Assembly (NCBI GenBank): GCA_965649825.1 | Contig: OZ287694.1 | Span: forward strand, 1,053,197-1,117,196 | Source of the DNA: Penicillus capitatus | Lineage: Eukaryota > Plantae > Chlorophyta | Reading direction: 5' to 3' | Length of the DNA: 64,000 bases | In this document: positions 6,005 to 48,200 of the stretch, piece after piece | Position numbering within the stretch: position 1 is the stretch's first letter | Layout: the number at the start of each line of letters is the position of its first letter | Position numbers and translations under genes: made by a program | The notes under the pieces: model-generated | What the model saw: the letters and a program-made list of their open reading frames with translations, nothing else | The model's database searches: none | What the model was told of the DNA's origin: nothing

Positions 6005-6199
6005 ACAACGATGCATCTCGTCTGGTAAAGATGAGGAGACACGCCAACTGTGTCCCCAATGACGAAGCGCCGCACGAATCAGAGATCCAGCCGAAGAAAT
6101 CCACGACGGACACAAACGACATGATAACATTACAGTATTCGGCCGAGACTGAATGTAAAGCCAGGGAAAGCAAAAAATGGATTGTGCGTTGTTCTGTAT

Positions 6200-7026
6200 T
6201 TACGACTCTTCCAGCAATATCTTCACCAGTTCTTCCAGATCAAAGTGATCTGCCGTTGCTTGATCGACGTGTTTGAAGATGCGCTTTGGACCGTCGAAGA
6301 TCAGGATGCCTCCTTGTTGGAGTGCTTGGTTGGACTTTGGCGGTATCCAGGGTTTCCATTTGAGGGTAGCTTCGACCAGGTCTGCCCCTCTGTCTTGTTT
6401 AAAGGCACGGCCGAAGATGCGCAACGGCGTTCGAATATCGAAGAATGTTTGCTGCACGTTGCGAACGAGACCCACTGCATCGTACAATGCATTTTCTGGA
6501 TCAGCCAGAAGTTGAGTTTTGGGAAATCCCGTTAGCTCCGAGAACTCTATGCCTCGTTCAGGTGGCCCGATAGAAATCAGAAACAAGCGAATTCCAGTGC
6601 CTTCAAGTCGAGGAAGAACATCTCTCTTCAGCTGCCGAGCATACTCCTGTGATGTGACAGGTCACACTTAGAAAGAGTAAACAAAGAAAGAACCTGACAG
6701 AAACAGCAGCCCATTGAACGTGCGAAAACGAGGACGCACTTTTCTGTTGCCTGCCATAAAGACGTCACCGCCACCTTGGTTTGCGATGAGACTAGCCAGG
6801 CTTCTAGACTCTGCAGGGCTGCGTAGTCTGCGTCCTGCACTGCGATCGGTTCTTCTGCGGTTTCTTCCTGCGTCGTCGCAGCATAAAGACGTCTTACGTC
6901 GCGTTCGCGAATGTGCACCACCCCCGAACGGCGTTTCTCGTTTATGCGCGGGGCTGCAGTGTGAAGTGGACGTGTAAAAAGGGCTGGAGACAGAACGCGG
7001 CAGTAAGGTGCACAACGCGATGCCAT
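6200..7026 (-). CDS. Peroxiredoxin-like 2 / AhpC-TSA-2 family protein with N-terminal transit peptide, 2 exons
   Basis: CVLVFARSMGCCFCQ|EYARQLKRDVLP...LFLISIG...LLADPENALYDAVGL...QQGGILIFDG: CxxC thioredoxin-like pattern of the PRXL2/FAM213 family. Confidence 0.85.
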
Positions 7027-7034
7027 CGTCGCAA

Positions 7035-7535
7035 TTAAGATTGTGCATTCGGGTCTCCAGTCTTCATGAATCGTTTGGCCTGAAGGGCCACCTTTTCTTC
7101 CATCAGCGCCTCGAGAACAATGTCAGATCCATATTGCGGTTTGTTCCCCGATTTCTTCTTCTCCATCATCCCGGTCTCCTTAGCTGACACCGGTAATGGC
7201 TCAGCTGCAGATGAGGACGCATGATGTTCCATGGGCTGATCTGGCTGCGCTTTGTGTCCTGTACCCCGAGGGAAGAGCTGCGTTCCTCTTCGAATCTCAT
7301 GTTGAATGCTGTGAAGCATCGACAGACTGTCCTGCACCTCTTTGTGGATTTTCGCCACGTCTGATTTACTACCCGACCGCGCAATCTCTTTTTGCATGAG
7401 GGAAATATGACCGACTGCCCACCCCACCGCCCTGCCGCAGTTTCTGCCCAGTTCGCCCAGTTGCCGAGGTTTCAATACCACTACTGCAAAAACTACTGCG
7501 CAGAGCAGTGCCGTATTGTCAAACCCCAATACCAT
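7035..7535 (-). CDS. tatB: Mitochondrial TatB-like Sec-independent translocase subunit
   Basis: N-terminal TM helix, then LKPRQLGELGRNCGRAVGWAVGHI amphipathic helix and IHKEVQDSLSMLHSIQHEIR, resembling plant mitochondrial TatB. ATG at 7535. Confidence 0.75.
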   Translation of the reverse strand: MVLGFDNTALLCAVVFAVVVLKPRQLGELGRNCGRAVGWAVGHISLMQKEIARSGSKSDVAKIHKEVQDSLSMLHSIQHEIRRGTQLFPRGTGHKAQPDQPMEHHASSSAAEPLPVSAKETGMMEKKKSGNKPQYGSDIVLEALMEEKVALQAKRFMKTGDPNAQS

Positions 7536-7545
7536 AGCACCCCGT

Positions 7546-7816
7546 TTACCCTTTTCTCTCACTTTGGTTCAGCACTTTGAGACGTGCAAGTTCGCGAGCG
7601 GCCTACAGAATTCGTCGTTTGTCGGTTGCGGAGAGATCGAAGAGGCATTACGCGAAGCTCCGCTTTCTCCTTCTGCGATGGACGCACCCAAAGCCAGTAA
7701 GCAGCCACAAAAGCGATACTCCACGAAGCAAGGTCGCGGGGATTACGAGCACCAAGGTTTTCAACAATGACGCGGCGCAGAGTCTTCAAACGTTGACGCC
7801 AGAACGGATCAAACAT
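7546..7816 (-). CDS. Small single-TM protein (73 aa), 2 exons (7816-7652, 7602-7546)
   Basis: MFDPFWRQRLK...RDLASWSIAFVAAYWLWVRPSQKEKAELR|AARELARLKVLNQSERKG*. 49-nt GT-AG intron in phase. The W-x-[VI]A...AY-x-LWV[KR]PSQ motif resembles a small uncharacterised green-lineage protein as remembered. Confidence 0.7.
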
Positions 7817-7882
7817 CAGAGGCGTGATGCACGTGACGCCTCTCGTTGCTTGAGTCAACAGGAGGCGACGACTCTTAGCAAA

Positions 7883-22643: not shown

Positions 22644-23829
22644 TTAGCTACCCAGAAGAGGTCTCTCCACATCGTTTTGTGCGTGCTGCGAAGCCCACCT
22701 CGAAACAATAACGGCGTCAATGAAGAGCTGGCTGATGTGGCCAACGATGCACGGGATCGTGATCAGGCCCAGGTCTCCGATCTCGTCTTCGTTGAGGTAC
22801 GAGATCACGGTGACCGAGACGGGGAGCGTCTTCTGGCTGCTCATGAGGAGGACGGCCTTCATCTCGCGCTCATCGAGTCGGAGGAGGCGAACGGCGACGT
22901 AGTTCATCGACAGAAAGACGAGGTGCATCGACACGCCGGCGACGACGACGCGGGCAACGTTGCCGGCCGACTGGTCCAGCAGGGTGTCCCTCGATGTGCT
23001 CAGGTTCTGCCAGACGATGCAGATGAGGTTGGCGTTGCTGATCAGACCCAGCGCCACCTTGTGCGCTTTCACGAACTCCTGTATTCTCTGGCTGCTCTCC
23101 CGGATGGCCTTGCCGACGATCAGCGGCACGAGGACCGTCAGCGCCATCTTCATCAGCAGGTTGGCGGCGTCGATCTCGACGCTGGTGCCCGATGCCACGA
23201 TCCACTGGACGAAGAAGGGGACGGTGAGGATGCCGATGAGGTTCGTGGCGACCGTCAGCATCAGCGCCAGCGTGCCGTTCCCGTACGCCTGCGTGACCAG
23301 CGTGACGCCGGACGTCAGCGTGGTCGGAACGATGGCGAAGATGGCCAGGCCGATCGAGAACTCTTCCGGTCCCAGCGGAATGTTGATGAGTCCGAAACCG
23401 AAACATGGCGTGACCAGGAGAATTGCGATCAGACCGTACACGAGTCCACGATGAGCTCTGAGTGTGGCTAAGATGTCTTCTGTCTTCAATGTAAGTCCAG
23501 AGATGACGAAGATCACGAAAACGCACGTAACATCCATCACTCCCTGTCCGCGAATCTAAACAGAAGCCCAATTATGGTACTTAGTTCTGAACAAAAGTTC
23601 GCAGCACAACTTTGACGGCCTTGCTCTTTTTACCGGGAAGCGGCCAGATGAGCGCCAAAACGAGTACGAGTAGAAAACCAAGCGGCAGAAAATTCTTGAC
23701 GACAAACTCTCTTAGTCGTCCACACATAGTGGACTTCGGTTTGTGGCGTGGGTTGCTTGTCGGTGCAGCATGCGTTATCTCTGGCTCTGCGAAGCATTGG
23801 TGTGAAGTCAATGACTGTTCTGTTTGCAT
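22644..23829 (-). CDS. Sodium/metabolite (bile acid:Na+ symporter-like, BASS4/SLC10A7-type) transporter, copy 1
   Basis: NFLPLGF, PTTLTSGVTL, NLIGILTVPF, SQKTLPV, IPCIVGHISQL; many TM segments. Confidence 0.9.
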
Positions 23830-25300: not shown

Positions 25301-26548
25301 CTACACGGTCGGGTTTTCCTTAAGATACTGTGAAGCCCACCTCGAAACAATAACGGCGTCAATGAAGAGCTGGCTGATGTGGCCAACGATGCAAGGGATC
25401 GTGATCAGGCCCAGGTCTCCGATCTCGTCTTCGTTTAGGTACGAGATCACGGTGACCGAAACGGGGAGCGTCTTCTGGCTGCTCATGAGGAGGACGGCCT
25501 TCATCTCGCGCTCATCGAGTCGGAGGAGGCGAACGGCGACGTAGTTCATCGACAGAAAGACGAGGTGCATCGACACGCCGGCGACGACGACGCGGGCGAC
25601 GTTGCCGGCCGACTGGTCCAGCAGGGTGTCCCTCGATGTGCTCAGGTTCTGCCAGACGATGCAGATGAGGTTGGCGTTGCTGATCAGACCCAGCGCCACC
25701 TTGTGCGCTTTCACGAACTCCTGTATTCTCTGGCTGCTCTCCCGGATGGCCTTGCCGACGATCAGCGGCACGAGGACCGTCAGCGCCATCTTCATCAGCA
25801 GGTCGGCGGCGTCGATCTCGACGCTGGTGCCCGATGCCACGATCCACTGCACGAAGAAGGGGACGGTGAGGATGCCGATGAGGTTCGTGGCGACCGTCAG
25901 CATCAGCGCCAGCGTGCCGTTCCCGTACGCCTGCGTGACCAGCGTGACGCCGGACGTCAGCGTGGTCGGAACGATGGCGAAGATGGCCAGGCCGATCGAG
26001 AACTCTTCCGGTCCCAGCGGAATGTTGATGAGTCCGAAACCGAAACATGGCGTGACCAGGAGAATTGCGATCAGACCAGCAACTAATCCTTGCCAAGCTT
26101 TGAGTGCTGCCCACACATCTTCTGTTTTTAGTGTCGCTCCAGATATTACGAAGATGATAAAAACATTAAATGTGCTAATCACACCGTAATCTTCAACCTA
26201 CATCAAAGAGGAATTGATTTCCCTTCTCTACATCGTCTACAGGAATTCCGACCTCCCATTCTTTTACTTTTTCTCCTGGAGTCGGATAAATCAGCGCCAC
26301 AACTAAGACGAATAAGAATCCTAATGGTAGAAAGTGCTTAATGAGCTTTTCTTTAAGCCAGGGCCTAAAGCAGACACTTCTGCATTCGAGTTCCCAAATG
26401 TGCTTTTCAACCACGTCATACGCCACGAGAGTGTCTCATCTTTCACATTTTTTAACAACGAAACATCTTTTTCGACAGGAACTTCGATTTCCAGTCCCTC
26501 GTACGTTACACTTGCGGCGTTTTTATCCATTGACTCTGAAGTCATCAT
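25301..26548 (-). CDS. Sodium/metabolite (BASS4/SLC10A7-type) transporter, tandem copy 2
   Basis: Same motifs as copy 1; upstream exons HFLPLGFLFVLVVALIYP; probable ATG 26548. Confidence 0.9.
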
Positions 26549-45292: not shown

Positions 45293-48200
45293 TCATTCCT
45301 GCAATCGCCTGGAGGAATTCTTCCAGGCGTCAATCTTTGCTCGCAATCTGTGGTTGTGGCGAAGCGTAGTGCTGCTGAATTTGAGATTGCTGACCGGAGA
45401 GGTGTCCTTTTCCTTCATCCATTCAGAAATTGCAGTCAGCTCGTAGGTATGGCCATCAGATGCAACGACTGGGGTTTTCATGATTTGCTAAACGCACACA
45501 GCAGAACGATCATGTCCATGACTCTCTTCGTGAGATGGACGCATACTTTGGTGATGGGACATTTGAAGGCTTCAATATTATACACGACTCCGCTATCCTC
45601 TTCTGGATCGTCATGCCTAGACTGCCCCTCATGCTACCATAGCAATAGACTTTAAAAAAGAGTGAGAAAAGTGTGAATGTATGGCACCTGGTTCGGGCCG
45701 ATCCGATTGAGCAGAAGGATGACCAGGCGTTCTCGCTCACGTTTGTCGTATCCCTCTCCAATAGCATCCCCAATCACCTCATTACACTGAAATCCTGTCA
45801 CATCAATAATCTCACTCTTATGGAAAAGTGAGAGAGAAGAGTGATGACTGACCTTTCTTGTTCTTTGAATCCAAACTTATCGCTGGAGACTCTAGAAGAC
45901 TCTCGACAGCCTCTATCTGGCCATACATGCAAGCAATGTGTAATGCCGAATTTCCTGCAGCGATACAGCAGAGATGAAGACAGGCAGACAGCACTCTCTA
46001 CCTTCACTGTCTTGTGCATCGAGGGAGACTTCATGATGCATGAGACGATGCACGACCTTGCTAAAGCCATTCTTTGCAGCTAAGAACAATGGTGTTTGTT
46101 TCTTTGCATTCCTGGCGTTGGGATCACAGCGACTGCACAACAACAAGTGCACCTAGATAGCAAAGAGTGGCTGGTGTAAAGATGGTATGACATGGGCTGT
46201 GGAGAAACGACCGTTTCAACTCCTCCGATCTCGGCAGCTGCATGCAGAGGTGTGTTACCATCTGCAGCAGCACAGGAGGGATAGGCTTGATTTCTTAACA
46301 ACAAGGAAGCAGCTTCATAGCTATTGGAGGCAGCTGCCATATGGAGGGGGGTCTTGCCATGCTTATCATTTGCATGTACATCTGCTCGATATGCCAACAA
46401 AAGAGATACAGCCATAGAAAAACCGTTGTGGCAGGCGTAATGCAAAGGCATTTGACCTGCTTCATCTTTCGCTTTTACATCCGCTCCTAAACACACAAGC
46501 GCTCTCATACGTATACCCACAGAGTCATGCATTCCTTCGTACCATTACTTAACAAGAACTCCACCATTTGTGGAGAACTGCCAAGTACAGCATAATGCAA
46601 GGCAGATATTGATCCAGGACAGCTGGCAAGATTAATACGGGCTTGTCGCAGAACAAGGAAATGGACTGTGGTAGTGTGACCATTTCGCACGGCATAGAGT
46701 AACGGTGTCAGTCCTTCATCTCCAAAGACGTTCATATCTGCACCATCATCCAACAGGTTCTTCACCTGTGTCGTATCTCCACGTGCAGCCGCTTCTACAA
46801 GCATCTGCACAACACGATCCATCATAAGCAGAATGATGATGTGACGTCTGGAGTGTGAGATACATACGTAGGATGTTTCGGTGGGCGGACGTTCAATGAT
46901 TTCGCGGATGCGTTGCGTTCGTCCTCCATCAGCTGTGACCCATTCACAGATCACATCCGATGGCGTCATATCCATGTTTGTCTTGCGATCTGGATCTGCA
47001 CCCGAACGTAACAGCAAACGCACCATTTCTAGATCACCTCTGCAACAGAGACACATATATGGACACTGTTATGGAAAGTGAGATGCAGACCGTGCACAGG
47101 CAACATGGAGGGCTGTCCAGTTTTCAACCGTTTGTATGTTAACGTCGAATGGTACCGTTGAATTCAGAATCATCTGTGCAATACTCTTATTTCCATGAAT
47201 CGATGCCAAGTAGAGCGGTGTTATTCCATCTGCTTTGGCAATGCCTGGATTGGCTTCCCAATCGATCAATTCCTTTACAGCTCCGGCCCATTGCTTCTCG
47301 ACTGCTAAGTGCAATGCTGTGGAACCATCGCTGATTCTCTTTCGGTCGATGACAGATCTGTCCGTGGCCAGCAGGAGAGCGACCACGTGCATGTAGCCGT
47401 TTCTGGCCGCTGTATGGAGCGGCAGTTCGCCGTTCTTCGTCGTGGCATTTGTTCTGGCACCACAATCGATCAGGACCTGGGCAACATGCACTTGTCCAAA
47501 GGCACAGGCTCCATGCAGAGCTGTTGCGTTGGAATTGATTGTTTCGTTCACTCGTGCTCCGTGCTGCAGCAGTTTCCTGGCAACTTCTACATATCCGTGG
47601 CGAGATGCGGCATAGAGTGGAGTCCATCCATGCTCTTCCACGCGGACATTCGGATCTACTCCTGATTCTAAGAGCCGATTCACGAGACCAGCATTTCCGC
47701 TATTAGCAGCAACAAAGAGATTGGGGCGTCCCTTTGCATCTACGTCGATAGATCCTTGCCGTCTGGAAGGAATATTTGTGGCGTCTGTCTGGGATCCAGA
47801 ATCTTGGCTTCCAGTACGCTTCGCTTTAGGGAGTCTCTTAAAGACACTGGAGTGTTTTCCGTCCACTGGGTTGTGATAATGATGATGATGATGATGCACC
47901 TCACTATCAACGCTTCCCACATGATCACGTGCAGATGAAGGGCCTTGGGACATTTTGTGACGTTCGGCGGACGGAGACGCGTTCAATTTGGTCACTGTGG
48001 ATGATTTGTTCATCGATAGGGATACTTGAGGGATAGACATGCTGCCACTTCTTGACAGGCGCTTGCTCTCTGATCTCACCACAGACGCTCGTTTCGGACT
48101 CTCTGTCACCGAATGGCGATAATCTCCGCGGACAGATCCTGGATGACGCTGAAGTCGACTCCAGTTAAAGGATGTCTGTCGTGGCGTACGAGCCGTCTGC

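What the first reader, a model, noticed from the sequence alone, without database searches (positions are those of the whole stretch)
6200..7816. Candidate tricistronic nuclear locus: small TM protein -> mtTatB -> PRXL2-like, with 10-nt and 8-nt gaps
Seen: on the minus strand the small gene stops at 7548-7546 and TatB starts at 7535 (10 nt between); TatB stops at 7037-7035 and the PRXL2-like ATG is at 7026 (8 nt between). There is no room for a 3' UTR, poly(A) site or promoter. The spliced first ORF contains no ATG in any frame between its start and the TatB ATG. Established: bicistronic nuclear mRNAs translated by leaky scanning are known in chlorophytes. Inference: cistrons 1-2 fit leaky scanning; TatB has many internal ATGs, so cistron 3 would need termination-reinitiation or an internal TSS. 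All three products look organelle-associated.
Basis: partly seen in the sequence, partly recalled or inferred. Interest (0 to 1): 0.7.

Follow-up and report, generated by a model that had tools for sequence, protein, structure and literature searches.

The report
Conserved three-gene algal nuclear locus
A green alga related to Bryopsis and Caulerpa packs three unrelated protein genes (a tiny membrane protein, a mitochondrial TatB-like subunit and a thioredoxin-fold redox protein) almost end to end on one strand; the first pair carries the known sequence marks of two proteins read from one mRNA, but how the third is made is unresolved.

Summary
On the minus strand, c1 (73 aa, one 49-nt intron), c2 (166 aa) and c3 (259 aa, one 47-nt intron) are separated by 10 and 8 nt.

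All three are real genes.
- c2 belongs to the green-lineage nuclear "mitochondrial TatB-like" family.
- c3 is an AhpC-TSA_2/PRXL2-type protein with a CxxC motif.
- c1 is an orphan single-pass protein under purifying selection (dN/dS about 0.17).

The source is a nuclear contig of an uncultured green alga near Bryopsidales.

c1→c2 is conserved in seven loci, including Bryopsis and a Caulerpa-like contig. In every one:
- the spliced stretch from the c1 AUG to the c2 AUG has no AUG;
- c1 has a weak start context and c2 a strong one.

This is the published green-algal leaky-scanning signature.

c3 joined later. It lies −1 to 11 nt after c2 in the five loci of the window's own clade that reach the junction, but elsewhere in Bryopsis. 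c2 has 4–11 internal AUGs, so leaky scanning cannot reach c3. Termination-reinitiation and a nested transcript both remain open. In four of those five loci the only UGUAA poly(A) signal lies 65–77 nt after c3.

No transcript data were available. This is a new member of a known kind.

The parts
7853..7859 (-). Conserved upstream heptamer GTTGACT, starting 43 nt before the c1 ATG. Candidate promoter or 5'-leader element.
   Evidence: The same heptamer starts 43, 43, 24 and 39 nt before the c1 start position in the window, L002, L003 and L008. It is not enriched in the window overall and has no copy inside c1-c3. Its function is inferred.
7652..7816 (-). c1 exon 1 (55 codons). It holds the start ATG at 7816 in a weak context (C at -3, T at +4) and a single predicted transmembrane segment, ASWSIAFVAAYWLWV.
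   Evidence: Orthologues are 59-84% identical, 42% to Bryopsis. dN/dS is 0.16-0.18.
7603..7651 (-). c1 intron, 49 nt, GTAATG...CTGTAG. It contains the only ATG between the c1 and c2 starts.
   Evidence: The intron position is conserved in L002, L003, L008 and Bryopsis L011, and the intron is absent in L009.
7546..7602 (-). c1 exon 2 (18 codons plus TAA at 7548-7546).
7536..7545 (-). Spacer 1, 10 nt, between the c1 stop and the c2 ATG.
   Evidence: Orthologous gaps are 8, 8, -1 (UGAUG), 5, 5 and 100 nt.
7035..7535 (-). c2, 166 aa, single exon. Member of the green-lineage nuclear mitochondrial TatB-like family. Strong start context (G at -3, G at +4). 11 internal ATGs.
7027..7034 (-). Spacer 2, 8 nt, between the c2 stop and the c3 ATG.
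   Evidence: Orthologous gaps are 7, 7, 11 and -1 (UAAUG). No significant RNA structure.
6694..7026 (-). c3 exon 1 (111 codons). It holds a poorly conserved N-terminal extension of about 55 aa that looks like a transit peptide, the start of the thioredoxin-fold domain, and the CxxC motif (GCCFCQ).
6647..6693 (-). c3 intron, 47 nt, GTTCTT...TCACAG.
   Evidence: An intron lies at the same point of the protein in L002, L010 and L008, and approximately so in Bryopsis.
6200..6646 (-). c3 exon 2 (148 codons plus stop). AhpC-TSA_2 / PRXL2-type domain.
   Evidence: Pfam PF13911, E = 5.9e-16, 59.3 bits against a cut-off of 27. Relatives.
6130..6134 (-). TGTAA, the candidate shared poly(A) signal, 65 nt after the c3 stop. 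It is the only TGTAA from 300 nt upstream of c1 to 400 nt past c3.
   Evidence: same position (+72 to +77) in L002, L010 and L008. TGTAA lies within 200 nt after 6 of 11 ORF ends, against 17.5% for random positions. UGUAA is the chlorophyte poly(A) signal (PMC7896298).

Best explanation
This is a conserved nuclear polycistronic locus of a siphonous (Bryopsidales-like) green alga.

Inferred transcript: one RNA starts in the roughly 420-bp divergent intergenic region upstream of c1. It runs through c1, c2 and c3 to the single UGUAA signal 65 nt after c3.

c1 and c2: scanning 40S subunits meet the c1 AUG in a poor context (pyrimidine at -3, no G at +4). Some initiate there and make the 73-aa membrane protein. 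The rest scan on through about 230 AUG-free nucleotides to the c2 AUG, which has a strong context (purine at -3, G at +4), and make the mitochondrial TatB-like protein. This c1->c2 bicistron predates the split between Bryopsis, a Caulerpa-like alga and the window's clade.

c3: the PRXL2-type redox protein was placed directly behind c2 later, in the window's own clade. It cannot be reached by leaky scanning. It is made in one of two ways:
(a) ribosomes finish c2 and restart at an AUG lying -1 to +11 nt from the stop (post-termination reinitiation); or
(b) a shorter nested transcript starts inside c1 or c2.

My estimates:
- c1->c2 bicistron read by leaky scanning: 0.8.
- The c1-c2 RNA physically extends through c3: 0.7.
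- c3 translated from that RNA by reinitiation: 0.35.
- c3 made mainly from a nested transcript: 0.45.

Shown here: gene identities, conservation of order and spacing, AUG depletion, start contexts, and placement of the poly(A) signal. Inferred: every statement about RNA and translation.
For: Gene reality:
- c1 has dN/dS of 0.16-0.18 with synonymous sites saturated between lineages.
- The c2 profile finds 134 family representatives. Sources name them TatB in land plants, Chara and Coccomyxa.
- A family profile hits solved TatA/TatB chains: 7b7o at 2.5e-6, 2l16 at 1.7e-3, 9e03_B at 2.7e-3.
- c3 hits PF13911 at 5.9e-16.

Synteny:
- c1->c2 is found in the window, L002, L010, L003, L008, L009 and Bryopsis L011.
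- c2->c3 is found in the window, L002, L010, L003 and L008, with gaps of 8, 7, 7, 11 and -1 nt.

Leaky-scanning marks:
- No ATG in the mature c1-AUG to c2-AUG stretch (215-331 nt) in 7 of 7 loci.
- The Bryopsis intron inside that stretch has 7 ATGs in 164 nt.
- Dinucleotide-shuffle P(0 ATG) is 0.001-0.01 in the three most divergent loci.
- None of the c1 proteins has an internal Met.
- c1 has a pyrimidine at -3 and a non-G at +4 in 7 of 7 loci. c2 has a purine at -3 and a G at +4 in 7 of 7.
- These are the criteria of Duenas et al. 2025 (PMC11892635).

One 3' end:
- The only TGTAA lies 65-77 nt after c3 in four of the five c3-bearing loci.
- Gene-end enrichment of TGTAA is shown.
- Upstream cistrons lacking UGUAA is a criterion of Gallaher et al. 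2021 (PMC7896298).

Plausibility of reinitiation:
- A 6-10 nt unstructured linker after a long ORF is enough for downstream expression in Chlamydomonas in vivo (PMC5144980).
- One relative has UAAUG at c2/c3 and another has UGAUG at c1/c2.
- The junctions are unstructured, with z-scores from -1.75 to +1.9.
Against: - No transcript, cap, poly(A), ribosome or peptide evidence could be obtained. The window comes from a metagenome assembly, and two scans of JGI metagenome contigs found no relatives.
- c2 is 166 codons long with 4-11 internal AUGs, some in strong context. Reinitiation after ORFs of that length is normally inefficient. Duenas et al. 2025 argue that leaky scanning, not reinitiation, is the main mechanism in green algae.
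- Short spacers may only reflect deletion bias. The c1-c2 spacer, which needs no tight coupling, is also short in this clade (5-10 nt) but 100 nt in Bryopsis.
- In L003 a TGTAA overlaps the c2 stop. That could end a c1-c2 RNA before c3 in that species.
- c3 stands alone in Bryopsis, Ostreobium and Symbiochloris.
- The single-locus AUG-depletion probabilities are modest for the window itself: 0.10 by shuffle and about 0.11 by codon resampling combined with Met frequency. The case rests on repetition across lineages.
Confidence: 0.6

Rival explanations
1. c1-c2 is a true bicistron, but c3 is expressed mainly from its own shorter mRNA. Its transcription start lies inside c1 or c2. The long RNA carries c3 only as an untranslated 3' region.
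For: c2 is rich in AUGs, so scanning cannot reach c3. c3 is an independent gene in Bryopsis, Ostreobium and Symbiochloris. The AUGs in the last ~35 nt of c2 are all in weak contexts, so a start site late in c2 would still favour the c3 AUG; the window has one intermediate-context AUG (G at +4) ~70 nt upstream of the c2 stop. In L003 a TGTAA overlaps the c2 stop.
Against: No promoter-like conserved element was seen inside c1 or c2, and the conserved GTTGACT occurs only upstream of c1. The stop-to-start distance stays between -1 and 11 nt across lineages with saturated synonymous sites, which a nested promoter does not require. No room is left for a promoter that travelled with c3.
Confidence: 0.45
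2. c1 is not a free-standing protein. It is a conserved-peptide upstream ORF whose only role is to tune translation of TatB.
For: c1 is short (71-78 aa) and always lies directly upstream of TatB. It has no relatives outside this algal group and no family or structure match.
Against: The whole length is conserved, most strongly a hydrophobic membrane-type segment (AAYWLWVRP is invariant), with dN/dS of about 0.17. It carries its own conserved intron. Its size is typical of ORF 1 in proven algal bicistrons, whose medians are 291-357 nt. AUG depletion and a weak start favour bypass, not stalling.
Confidence: 0.15
3. These are three ordinary monocistronic genes squeezed together by genome compaction, with overlapping untranslated regions and no translational coupling at all.
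For: Convergent neighbours here do overlap at their 3' ends: the c3 TGTAA is at 6134-6130 and the MT-A70 TGTAA is at 6154-6158 on the other strand.
Against: Intergenic distances around the locus are ordinary: about 420 bp upstream and 196 bp downstream. c1 and c2 lack any TGTAA in four of five loci. AUG depletion and the opposite start contexts in 7 of 7 loci have no explanation under this model.
Confidence: 0.08
4. The locus is an assembly artefact, or organellar or bacterial DNA with an operon.
For: Near-abutting genes resemble a prokaryotic operon.
Against: Six independent assemblies from different samples show the same order. GT..AG introns of 47-52 nt sit at conserved positions. The contig is 1.84 Mb with eukaryotic kinase, ankyrin and MT-A70 genes. 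There are no Rfam hits and no organellar signature.
Confidence: 0.01

Closest known systems
Exclusively bicistronic nuclear loci of green algae read by leaky scanning (Gallaher et al. 2021, PMC7896298; Duenas et al. 2025, PMC11892635)
   Same: ORF 1 is small (222 nt) with a weak start context. No AUG occurs before ORF 2. The inter-ORF is short. The upstream cistrons lack UGUAA and the last one has it. The pairing is conserved across deep divergence. One partner is mitochondrial, as is frequent in those datasets.
   Different: This pair is not in their datasets: no TatB or translocase entry other than Tom22 was found. The lineage (Bryopsidales-like Ulvophyceae) was not sampled by them, and my search found only chloroplast polycistrons reported for it. 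Here a third full-size cistron follows an AUG-rich ORF, which their mechanism does not explain.
Synthetic Chlamydomonas bicistrons with a 6-10 nt linker (Onishi and Pringle 2016, PMC5144980)
   Same: A long upstream ORF, a short unstructured junction and a downstream AUG a few nucleotides after the stop. The downstream protein is made in vivo. The c2-c3 junction has the same geometry (7-11 nt or overlapping, unstructured).
   Different: Those constructs are artificial and selected for low marker expression. Their mechanism is itself disputed between reinitiation and leaky scanning. Here nothing is measured.
Plant mitochondrial TatB-like protein (Carrie et al. 2016; Schafer et al. 2020, as cited in PMC6251230 and bioRxiv 10.1101/2020.04.06.026997)
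   Same: c2 aligns end to end with the green-lineage family. The shared blocks are the N-terminal membrane helix, hinge and long helix, the HKE(V/L)Q...IR.EIR block, and the C-terminal LPVSA...GSDI.LEA block. None of the members has an N-terminal presequence. A Bryopsidales mitochondrial genome encodes the partner tatC (PMC6944098).
   Different: c2 is a short form (166 aa against about 230-320 aa) that lacks the variable middle region. The conserved membrane Glu is Ala and the hinge Gly is Lys, changes shared with Caulerpa. It is embedded in a polycistron.
Viral termination-reinitiation junctions (UAAUG/AUGA type: caliciviruses, influenza B segment 7, victoriviruses). From my own knowledge.
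   Same: Overlapping or nearly abutting stop and start after a long ORF. UAAUG occurs at c2/c3 in L008 and UGAUG at c1/c2 in L003.
   Different: No upstream structured element was detected. Complementarity to 18S rRNA could not be tested. The overlap is not fixed across species.

Membership tests
Green-algal polycistronic nuclear locus (leaky-scanning type) | Two or more conserved protein-coding ORFs, colinear on one strand, with a short inter-ORF | tested here: met
   Gaps are 10 and 8 nt. The order is conserved in 7 loci for c1-c2 and 5 loci for c2-c3. Each ORF is under purifying selection.
Green-algal polycistronic nuclear locus (leaky-scanning type) | Weak start context at ORF 1 | tested here: met
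   c1 has a pyrimidine at -3 and a non-G at +4 in 7 of 7 loci. c2 has a purine at -3 and a G at +4 in 7 of 7.
Green-algal polycistronic nuclear locus (leaky-scanning type) | Depletion of AUG between the ORF 1 start and the downstream ORF start | tested here: met
   For c1->c2: 0 ATG in 215-331 nt of mature RNA in 7 of 7 loci, while introns carry ATGs.
Green-algal polycistronic nuclear locus (leaky-scanning type) | The same AUG depletion ahead of the third ORF | tested here: not met
   c2 carries 4-11 internal ATGs, several with a purine at -3 and a G at +4.
Green-algal polycistronic nuclear locus (leaky-scanning type) | Upstream ORFs lack the UGUAA poly(A) signal and the last ORF has it | tested here: met
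   The single TGTAA lies 65-77 nt after c3 in the window, L002, L010 and L008. L003 is the exception: TGTAA overlaps the c2 stop.
Green-algal polycistronic nuclear locus (leaky-scanning type) | All ORFs on one mature, capped, polyadenylated mRNA, and each translated | not testable with these tools
   No transcriptome, Ribo-seq or proteome is available for this uncultured organism. Metagenome scans found no cDNA-like contigs.
TatA/TatB family; plant mitochondrial TatB-like subfamily | Sequence homology to the named family | tested here: met
   The c2 profile finds 134 representatives at E <= 1e-3, 46 of them at <= 1e-10. These include proteins named TatB in Apostasia, Chara, Carnegiea, Citrullus and Coccomyxa. 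The family profile hits solved TatA/TatB chains.
TatA/TatB family; plant mitochondrial TatB-like subfamily | Direct match of c2 itself to the curated TatA_B_E or TatB models above their cut-offs | tested here: not met
   c2 has no PF02416 hit. TIGR01410 gives E = 0.013 and 16 bits against a cut-off of 56.5. Relatives hit PF02416 weakly, and one is above the cut-off. Membership is therefore transitive.
TatA/TatB family; plant mitochondrial TatB-like subfamily | N-terminal membrane helix, hinge, then a long amphipathic helix | tested here: inconclusive
   The AlphaFold2 model shows helix 7-20, a break at 21-22 and helix 23-53, but mean pLDDT is only 51. No fold search was run on so poor a model.
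TatA/TatB family; plant mitochondrial TatB-like subfamily | Conserved polar Glu in the membrane helix and a Gly-Pro hinge | tested here: not met
   The consensus SYGEL...GPKDLP reads DNTAL...LKPRQLG in c2. The same loss is seen in Caulerpa but not in Bryopsis.
TatA/TatB family; plant mitochondrial TatB-like subfamily | Mitochondrial location and partnership with mitochondrially encoded TatC | not testable with these tools
   The only support is indirect: tatC is present in the Ostreobium mitochondrial genome (PMC6944098).
AhpC-TSA_2 / PRXL2-type thioredoxin-fold proteins | Match to PF13911 above its cut-off, and a CxxC motif | tested here: met
   59.3 bits against a cut-off of 27, E = 5.9e-16. 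The motif is C-C-F-C in the window, C-F-F-C in L002 and C-V-F-C in L008.
Termination-reinitiation junctions | Stop and restart codons overlapping or within a few nucleotides | tested here: met
   The c2/c3 distance is 8, 7, 7, 11 and -1 nt.
Termination-reinitiation junctions | An upstream RNA element that tethers the 40S subunit (structure or 18S complementarity) | tested here: inconclusive
   Folding is no more stable than in shuffles (z from -1.75 to +1.9). 18S complementarity was not tested because no rRNA of this organism is in hand.

The most novel reading that the evidence does not exclude
The c2-c3 junction is a natural, conserved case of post-termination reinitiation after a full-length, AUG-rich cellular ORF in a green alga. 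One nuclear mRNA would then use two different mechanisms in series: leaky scanning for c1->c2 and reinitiation for c2->c3.

In addition, c1 would be a so far unrecognised partner of the mitochondrial Tat / complex III assembly pathway, kept in fixed stoichiometric coupling with TatB.
Probability: 0.25. Interest if true: 0.8.

Novelty: new member of a known kind. Interest (0 to 1): 0.55.

Why it matters
Polycistronic nuclear genes in green algae are established, and the current view is that leaky scanning explains them.

- **Lineage.** This locus extends the phenomenon to the siphonous Bryopsidales lineage.
- **TatB partner.** It shows that the mitochondrial TatB-like gene is the second ORF of an old bicistron. 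Standard annotation misses the first ORF: in the Bryopsis locus returned here the only gene call in that stretch is TatB. The unknown 73-aa membrane protein always encoded with TatB is a concrete candidate for a missing factor in the poorly understood mitochondrial Tat pathway.
- **Third cistron.** The arrangement of c3 cannot be explained by leaky scanning. It is therefore a ready-made natural test case for whether green algae also use termination-reinitiation. That question was left open by the Onishi-Pringle constructs and by Duenas et al. It also matters for multi-gene expression design in algae.

Tried and rejected
- **Rfam** scan of the whole window: no hits.
- **c1 identity:** Pfam, NCBIfam, a PDB profile search and a profile-profile comparison against the TatB family were all negative. 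The idea that c1 is a diverged TatA/TatB paralogue is not supported (hhalign probability 0.3%).
- **c2 structure:** the model was too poor (pLDDT 51) for a meaningful fold search, so none was run.
- **More relatives or cDNA-like contigs:** both JGI metagenome scans found nothing. Searching papers for the sample accessions found nothing.
- **Deeper synteny:** no c1 was found upstream of TatB in Coccomyxa or Trebouxia. No TatB was found upstream of c3 in Bryopsis, Ostreobium or Symbiochloris.
- **IRES or pseudoknot at the junctions:** folding energies are no different from shuffles.
- **Read-through or frameshift fusion of c2 and c3:** rejected, because the frame offset differs between species (gaps 8, 7, 11, -1) and both the stop and the ATG are conserved.
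- **Alternative splicing bringing c3 close to the cap:** no conserved acceptor lies near the c3 ATG.
- **Other tight ORF pairs in the window** as further polycistrons: those inspected are intron-split exons of ankyrin or coiled-coil genes. The reversed-sequence null used there is weak.
- **GTTGACT as a general promoter motif:** it is not enriched in the window.
Full report
**1. The observation**

- c1 starts at ATG 7816. It has a 49-nt GT..AG intron at 7651-7603 and stops at TAA 7548-7546.
- Ten nucleotides later, c2 starts at 7535. It stops at TAA 7037-7035.
- Eight nucleotides later, c3 starts at 7026. It has a 47-nt intron at 6693-6647 and ends at 6200.

After splicing, no ATG occurs in any frame between the c1 ATG and the c2 ATG (232 nt). 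The only ATG in that span lies in the intron. c2 has 11 further ATGs.

**2. Source of the window**

The window is part of a 1.84-Mb contig of an ENA metagenome assembly. G+C is about 50%. Neighbouring genes are eukaryotic: protein kinases, ankyrin-repeat proteins, an auxilin-like J-domain protein and MT-A70. Introns are short and spliceosomal.

The best named relatives of c2 and c3 are Caulerpa lentillifera, Bryopsis sp. KO-2023 and Ostreobium quekettii. c2 shares derived residues with Caulerpa. The organism is therefore an uncultured green alga in or near Bryopsidales.

**3. The three genes**

*c3.* It matches Pfam AhpC-TSA_2 (PF13911) at E = 5.9e-16, well above the curated cut-off. It keeps a CxxC motif in all orthologues. 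An N-terminal extension of about 55 residues is Arg/Ser/Ala-rich and poorly conserved, which looks like an organellar transit peptide. This last point is inference.

*c2.* It has no direct Pfam hit and only sub-threshold NCBIfam hits to TatB and TatA/E. Membership is instead shown transitively:
- A profile of c2 and its two closest orthologues, scored against 1.84 billion representatives, finds 134 proteins at E <= 1e-3.
- The named ones are green-lineage proteins of 170-320 aa that sources call TatB. They come from Apostasia, Carnegiea, Citrullus, Chara and Coccomyxa. Unnamed relatives come from Selaginella, Diphasiastrum, Mesostigma, Pyramimonas and Trebouxia.
- These relatives hit Pfam TatA_B_E weakly at their N-termini, one above the cut-off.
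- c2 aligns with them end to end.
- The family profile hits solved TatA/TatB chains: chloroplast TatA 7b7o at 2.5e-6, TatAd 2l16 at 1.7e-3, and TatB 9e03_B at 2.7e-3.

This is the nuclear "mitochondrial TatB-like" family of plants. Per the literature it forms a complex with mitochondrially encoded TatC and is needed for Rieske protein topogenesis (PMC6251230; bioRxiv 10.1101/2020.04.06.026997). A Bryopsidales mitochondrial genome does encode tatC (PMC6944098).

c2 is an atypical member. It is short, it lacks the variable middle region, and the conserved membrane Glu and hinge Gly are replaced. The structure model has the expected helix-hinge-helix order but low confidence.

*c1.* This is a 73-aa protein with one hydrophobic segment. 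It has no match to any family, solved structure or the Tat profile. It is nevertheless a real gene. Orthologues are 42-84% identical, with an invariant AAYWLWVRP core. The intron position is conserved. dN/dS is 0.16-0.18, while synonymous sites are saturated between lineages.

**4. Related loci**

Exact-protein look-ups and profile searches brought in six further loci.

*c1->c2* is present in seven loci in all:

| Locus | c1-c2 gap |
|---|---|
| Window | 10 nt |
| L002 | 8 nt |
| L010 | 8 nt |
| L003 | -1 nt (UGAUG) |
| L008 | 5 nt |
| L009 (Caulerpa-like) | 5 nt |
| L011 (Bryopsis) | 100 nt, with a 164-nt intron in c1 |

In the Bryopsis locus the gene table returned here lists only TatB in that stretch, so the c1 ORF is unannotated there. 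No c1 was found upstream of TatB in Coccomyxa or Trebouxia.

*c2->c3* is present in the window, L002, L010, L003 and L008, with gaps of 8, 7, 7, 11 and -1 nt (UAAUG). L009 ends too early to tell. In Bryopsis the two genes lie 5.4 Mb apart on one contig. In Ostreobium and Symbiochloris no TatB lies upstream of c3.

The history is therefore an old c1-TatB bicistron, to which c3 was added, with its ancestral intron, in the window's own clade.

**5. How c1 and c2 are read**

Duenas et al. 2025 (PMC11892635) define the green-algal leaky-scanning signature: a small ORF 1, a weak ORF 1 start context, few or no AUGs before ORF 2, a short 5' leader and a short inter-ORF.

All seven loci show it:
- No ATG occurs in the mature stretch of 215-331 nt, whereas the Bryopsis intron within it has 7 ATGs.
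- At the c1 start, -3 is a pyrimidine and +4 is not G.
- At the c2 start, -3 is a purine and +4 is G.

Shuffle tests give P(no ATG) of 0.001-0.01 for the three most divergent loci and 0.1-0.3 for the others. No c1 protein has an internal Met, and codon resampling adds a further factor. No single locus is decisive. The repetition across lineages with saturated silent sites is.

The nearest upstream ATG is about 124 nt before c1 in the window and 84 nt before it in L003, which allows a short AUG-free leader.

**6. The 3' end**

UGUAA is the chlorophyte poly(A) signal, and its absence after upstream cistrons is a criterion of Gallaher et al. 2021 (PMC7896298).

In this window TGTAA is under-represented overall (64 found against 125 expected). 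Yet it lies within 200 nt after 6 of 11 ORF ends, against 17.5% for random positions.

Across the locus, the only TGTAA lies 65 nt after c3. The same holds at +72 to +77 nt in L002, L010 and L008. So the RNA that carries c1 and c2 most likely runs through c3.

L003 is an exception, because there a TGTAA overlaps the c2 stop.

**7. How c3 is read**

Leaky scanning is excluded by the 4-11 AUGs in c2, some in strong context and some conserved. Read-through or frameshift fusion is excluded by the varying frame offsets. No conserved acceptor site near the c3 AUG suggests alternative splicing. No RNA structure stands out at the junction.

Two options remain.

- *Post-termination reinitiation.* It fits the conserved -1 to 11 nt geometry. 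It also resembles constructs that work in Chlamydomonas with 6-10 nt linkers (PMC5144980). But it is generally inefficient after long ORFs, and Duenas et al. do not favour it as the main algal mechanism.
- *A nested c3-only transcript.* It needs a start site inside coding sequence, for which I found no mark. It cannot be excluded, and short spacers may only reflect deletion bias in this clade.

I cannot decide between the two without RNA data.

**8. Comparison with what is known, and novelty**

The c1-TatB pair is a new member of the known class of green-algal bicistrons. It is absent from the published datasets. For Bryopsidales, my literature search found only chloroplast polycistrons reported.

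Three points go beyond the ordinary:
- TatB is the second ORF of a conserved bicistron.
- It has a constant orphan membrane-protein partner.
- A third cistron is placed in a way that the accepted mechanism cannot serve.

None of these is yet backed by expression data.

**9. Verdict**

Interest is moderate, at 0.55.

Noticed in passing
L010:3099-3378 (second contig of sample ERZ26696514): In this near-identical second copy (a haplotype or recent duplicate of L002), the acceptor of the c1 intron reads TG instead of AG. If the change is real, c1 would read into the intron and stop after about 60 aa. The retained intron has no ATG, so scanning to c2 would still be possible.
   Followed up: partly
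L008:1300-1400: At the position of the c1 start codon this relative has ACG followed by CTG. The first in-frame ATG is 23 codons upstream, ahead of the conserved GTTGACT element. c1 may start at a near-cognate codon there, or carry an N-terminal extension.
   Followed up: partly
L003:4185-4195: A TGTAA overlaps the c2 stop codon, 11 nt before the c3 ATG. It is the only locus where a candidate poly(A) signal lies between the cistrons.
   Followed up: no
window 7853-7859 (-), and 7830-7835: The heptamer GTTGACT starts 24-43 nt upstream of the c1 start in four divergent relatives, although the flanking non-coding sequence is otherwise not alignable. A CACGTG palindrome next to it is shared only with the closest relative, L002.
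   Followed up: partly
window 6130-6158: The convergent neighbours overlap at their 3' ends. The candidate poly(A) signal of c3 (minus strand, 6134-6130) lies beyond that of the MT-A70 gene on the plus strand (6154-6158).
   Followed up: no
window 22644-23540 and 25301-26182 (-): Two tandem copies of a roughly 295-aa multi-pass membrane protein gene. They are almost identical over about 270 residues and differ at both ends, which suggests a recent tandem duplication.
   Followed up: no
whole window: TGTAA/TTACA is about half as frequent as composition predicts (64 against 125 expected). This is consistent with selection against stray poly(A) signals.
   Followed up: partly
L011:3500-4000 (Bryopsis sp. 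KO-2023, BSYQ01000008.1): A c1 orthologue (76 aa, E = 5e-28 to the c1 profile) lies upstream of the annotated TatB gene BSKO_09746. It does not appear among the gene calls returned for that locus.
   Followed up: yes
window 47056-47069 and 46070-46080 (-): Tight stop-to-ATG ORF pairs here are exons of ankyrin-repeat genes split by short introns, not separate cistrons.
   Followed up: yes
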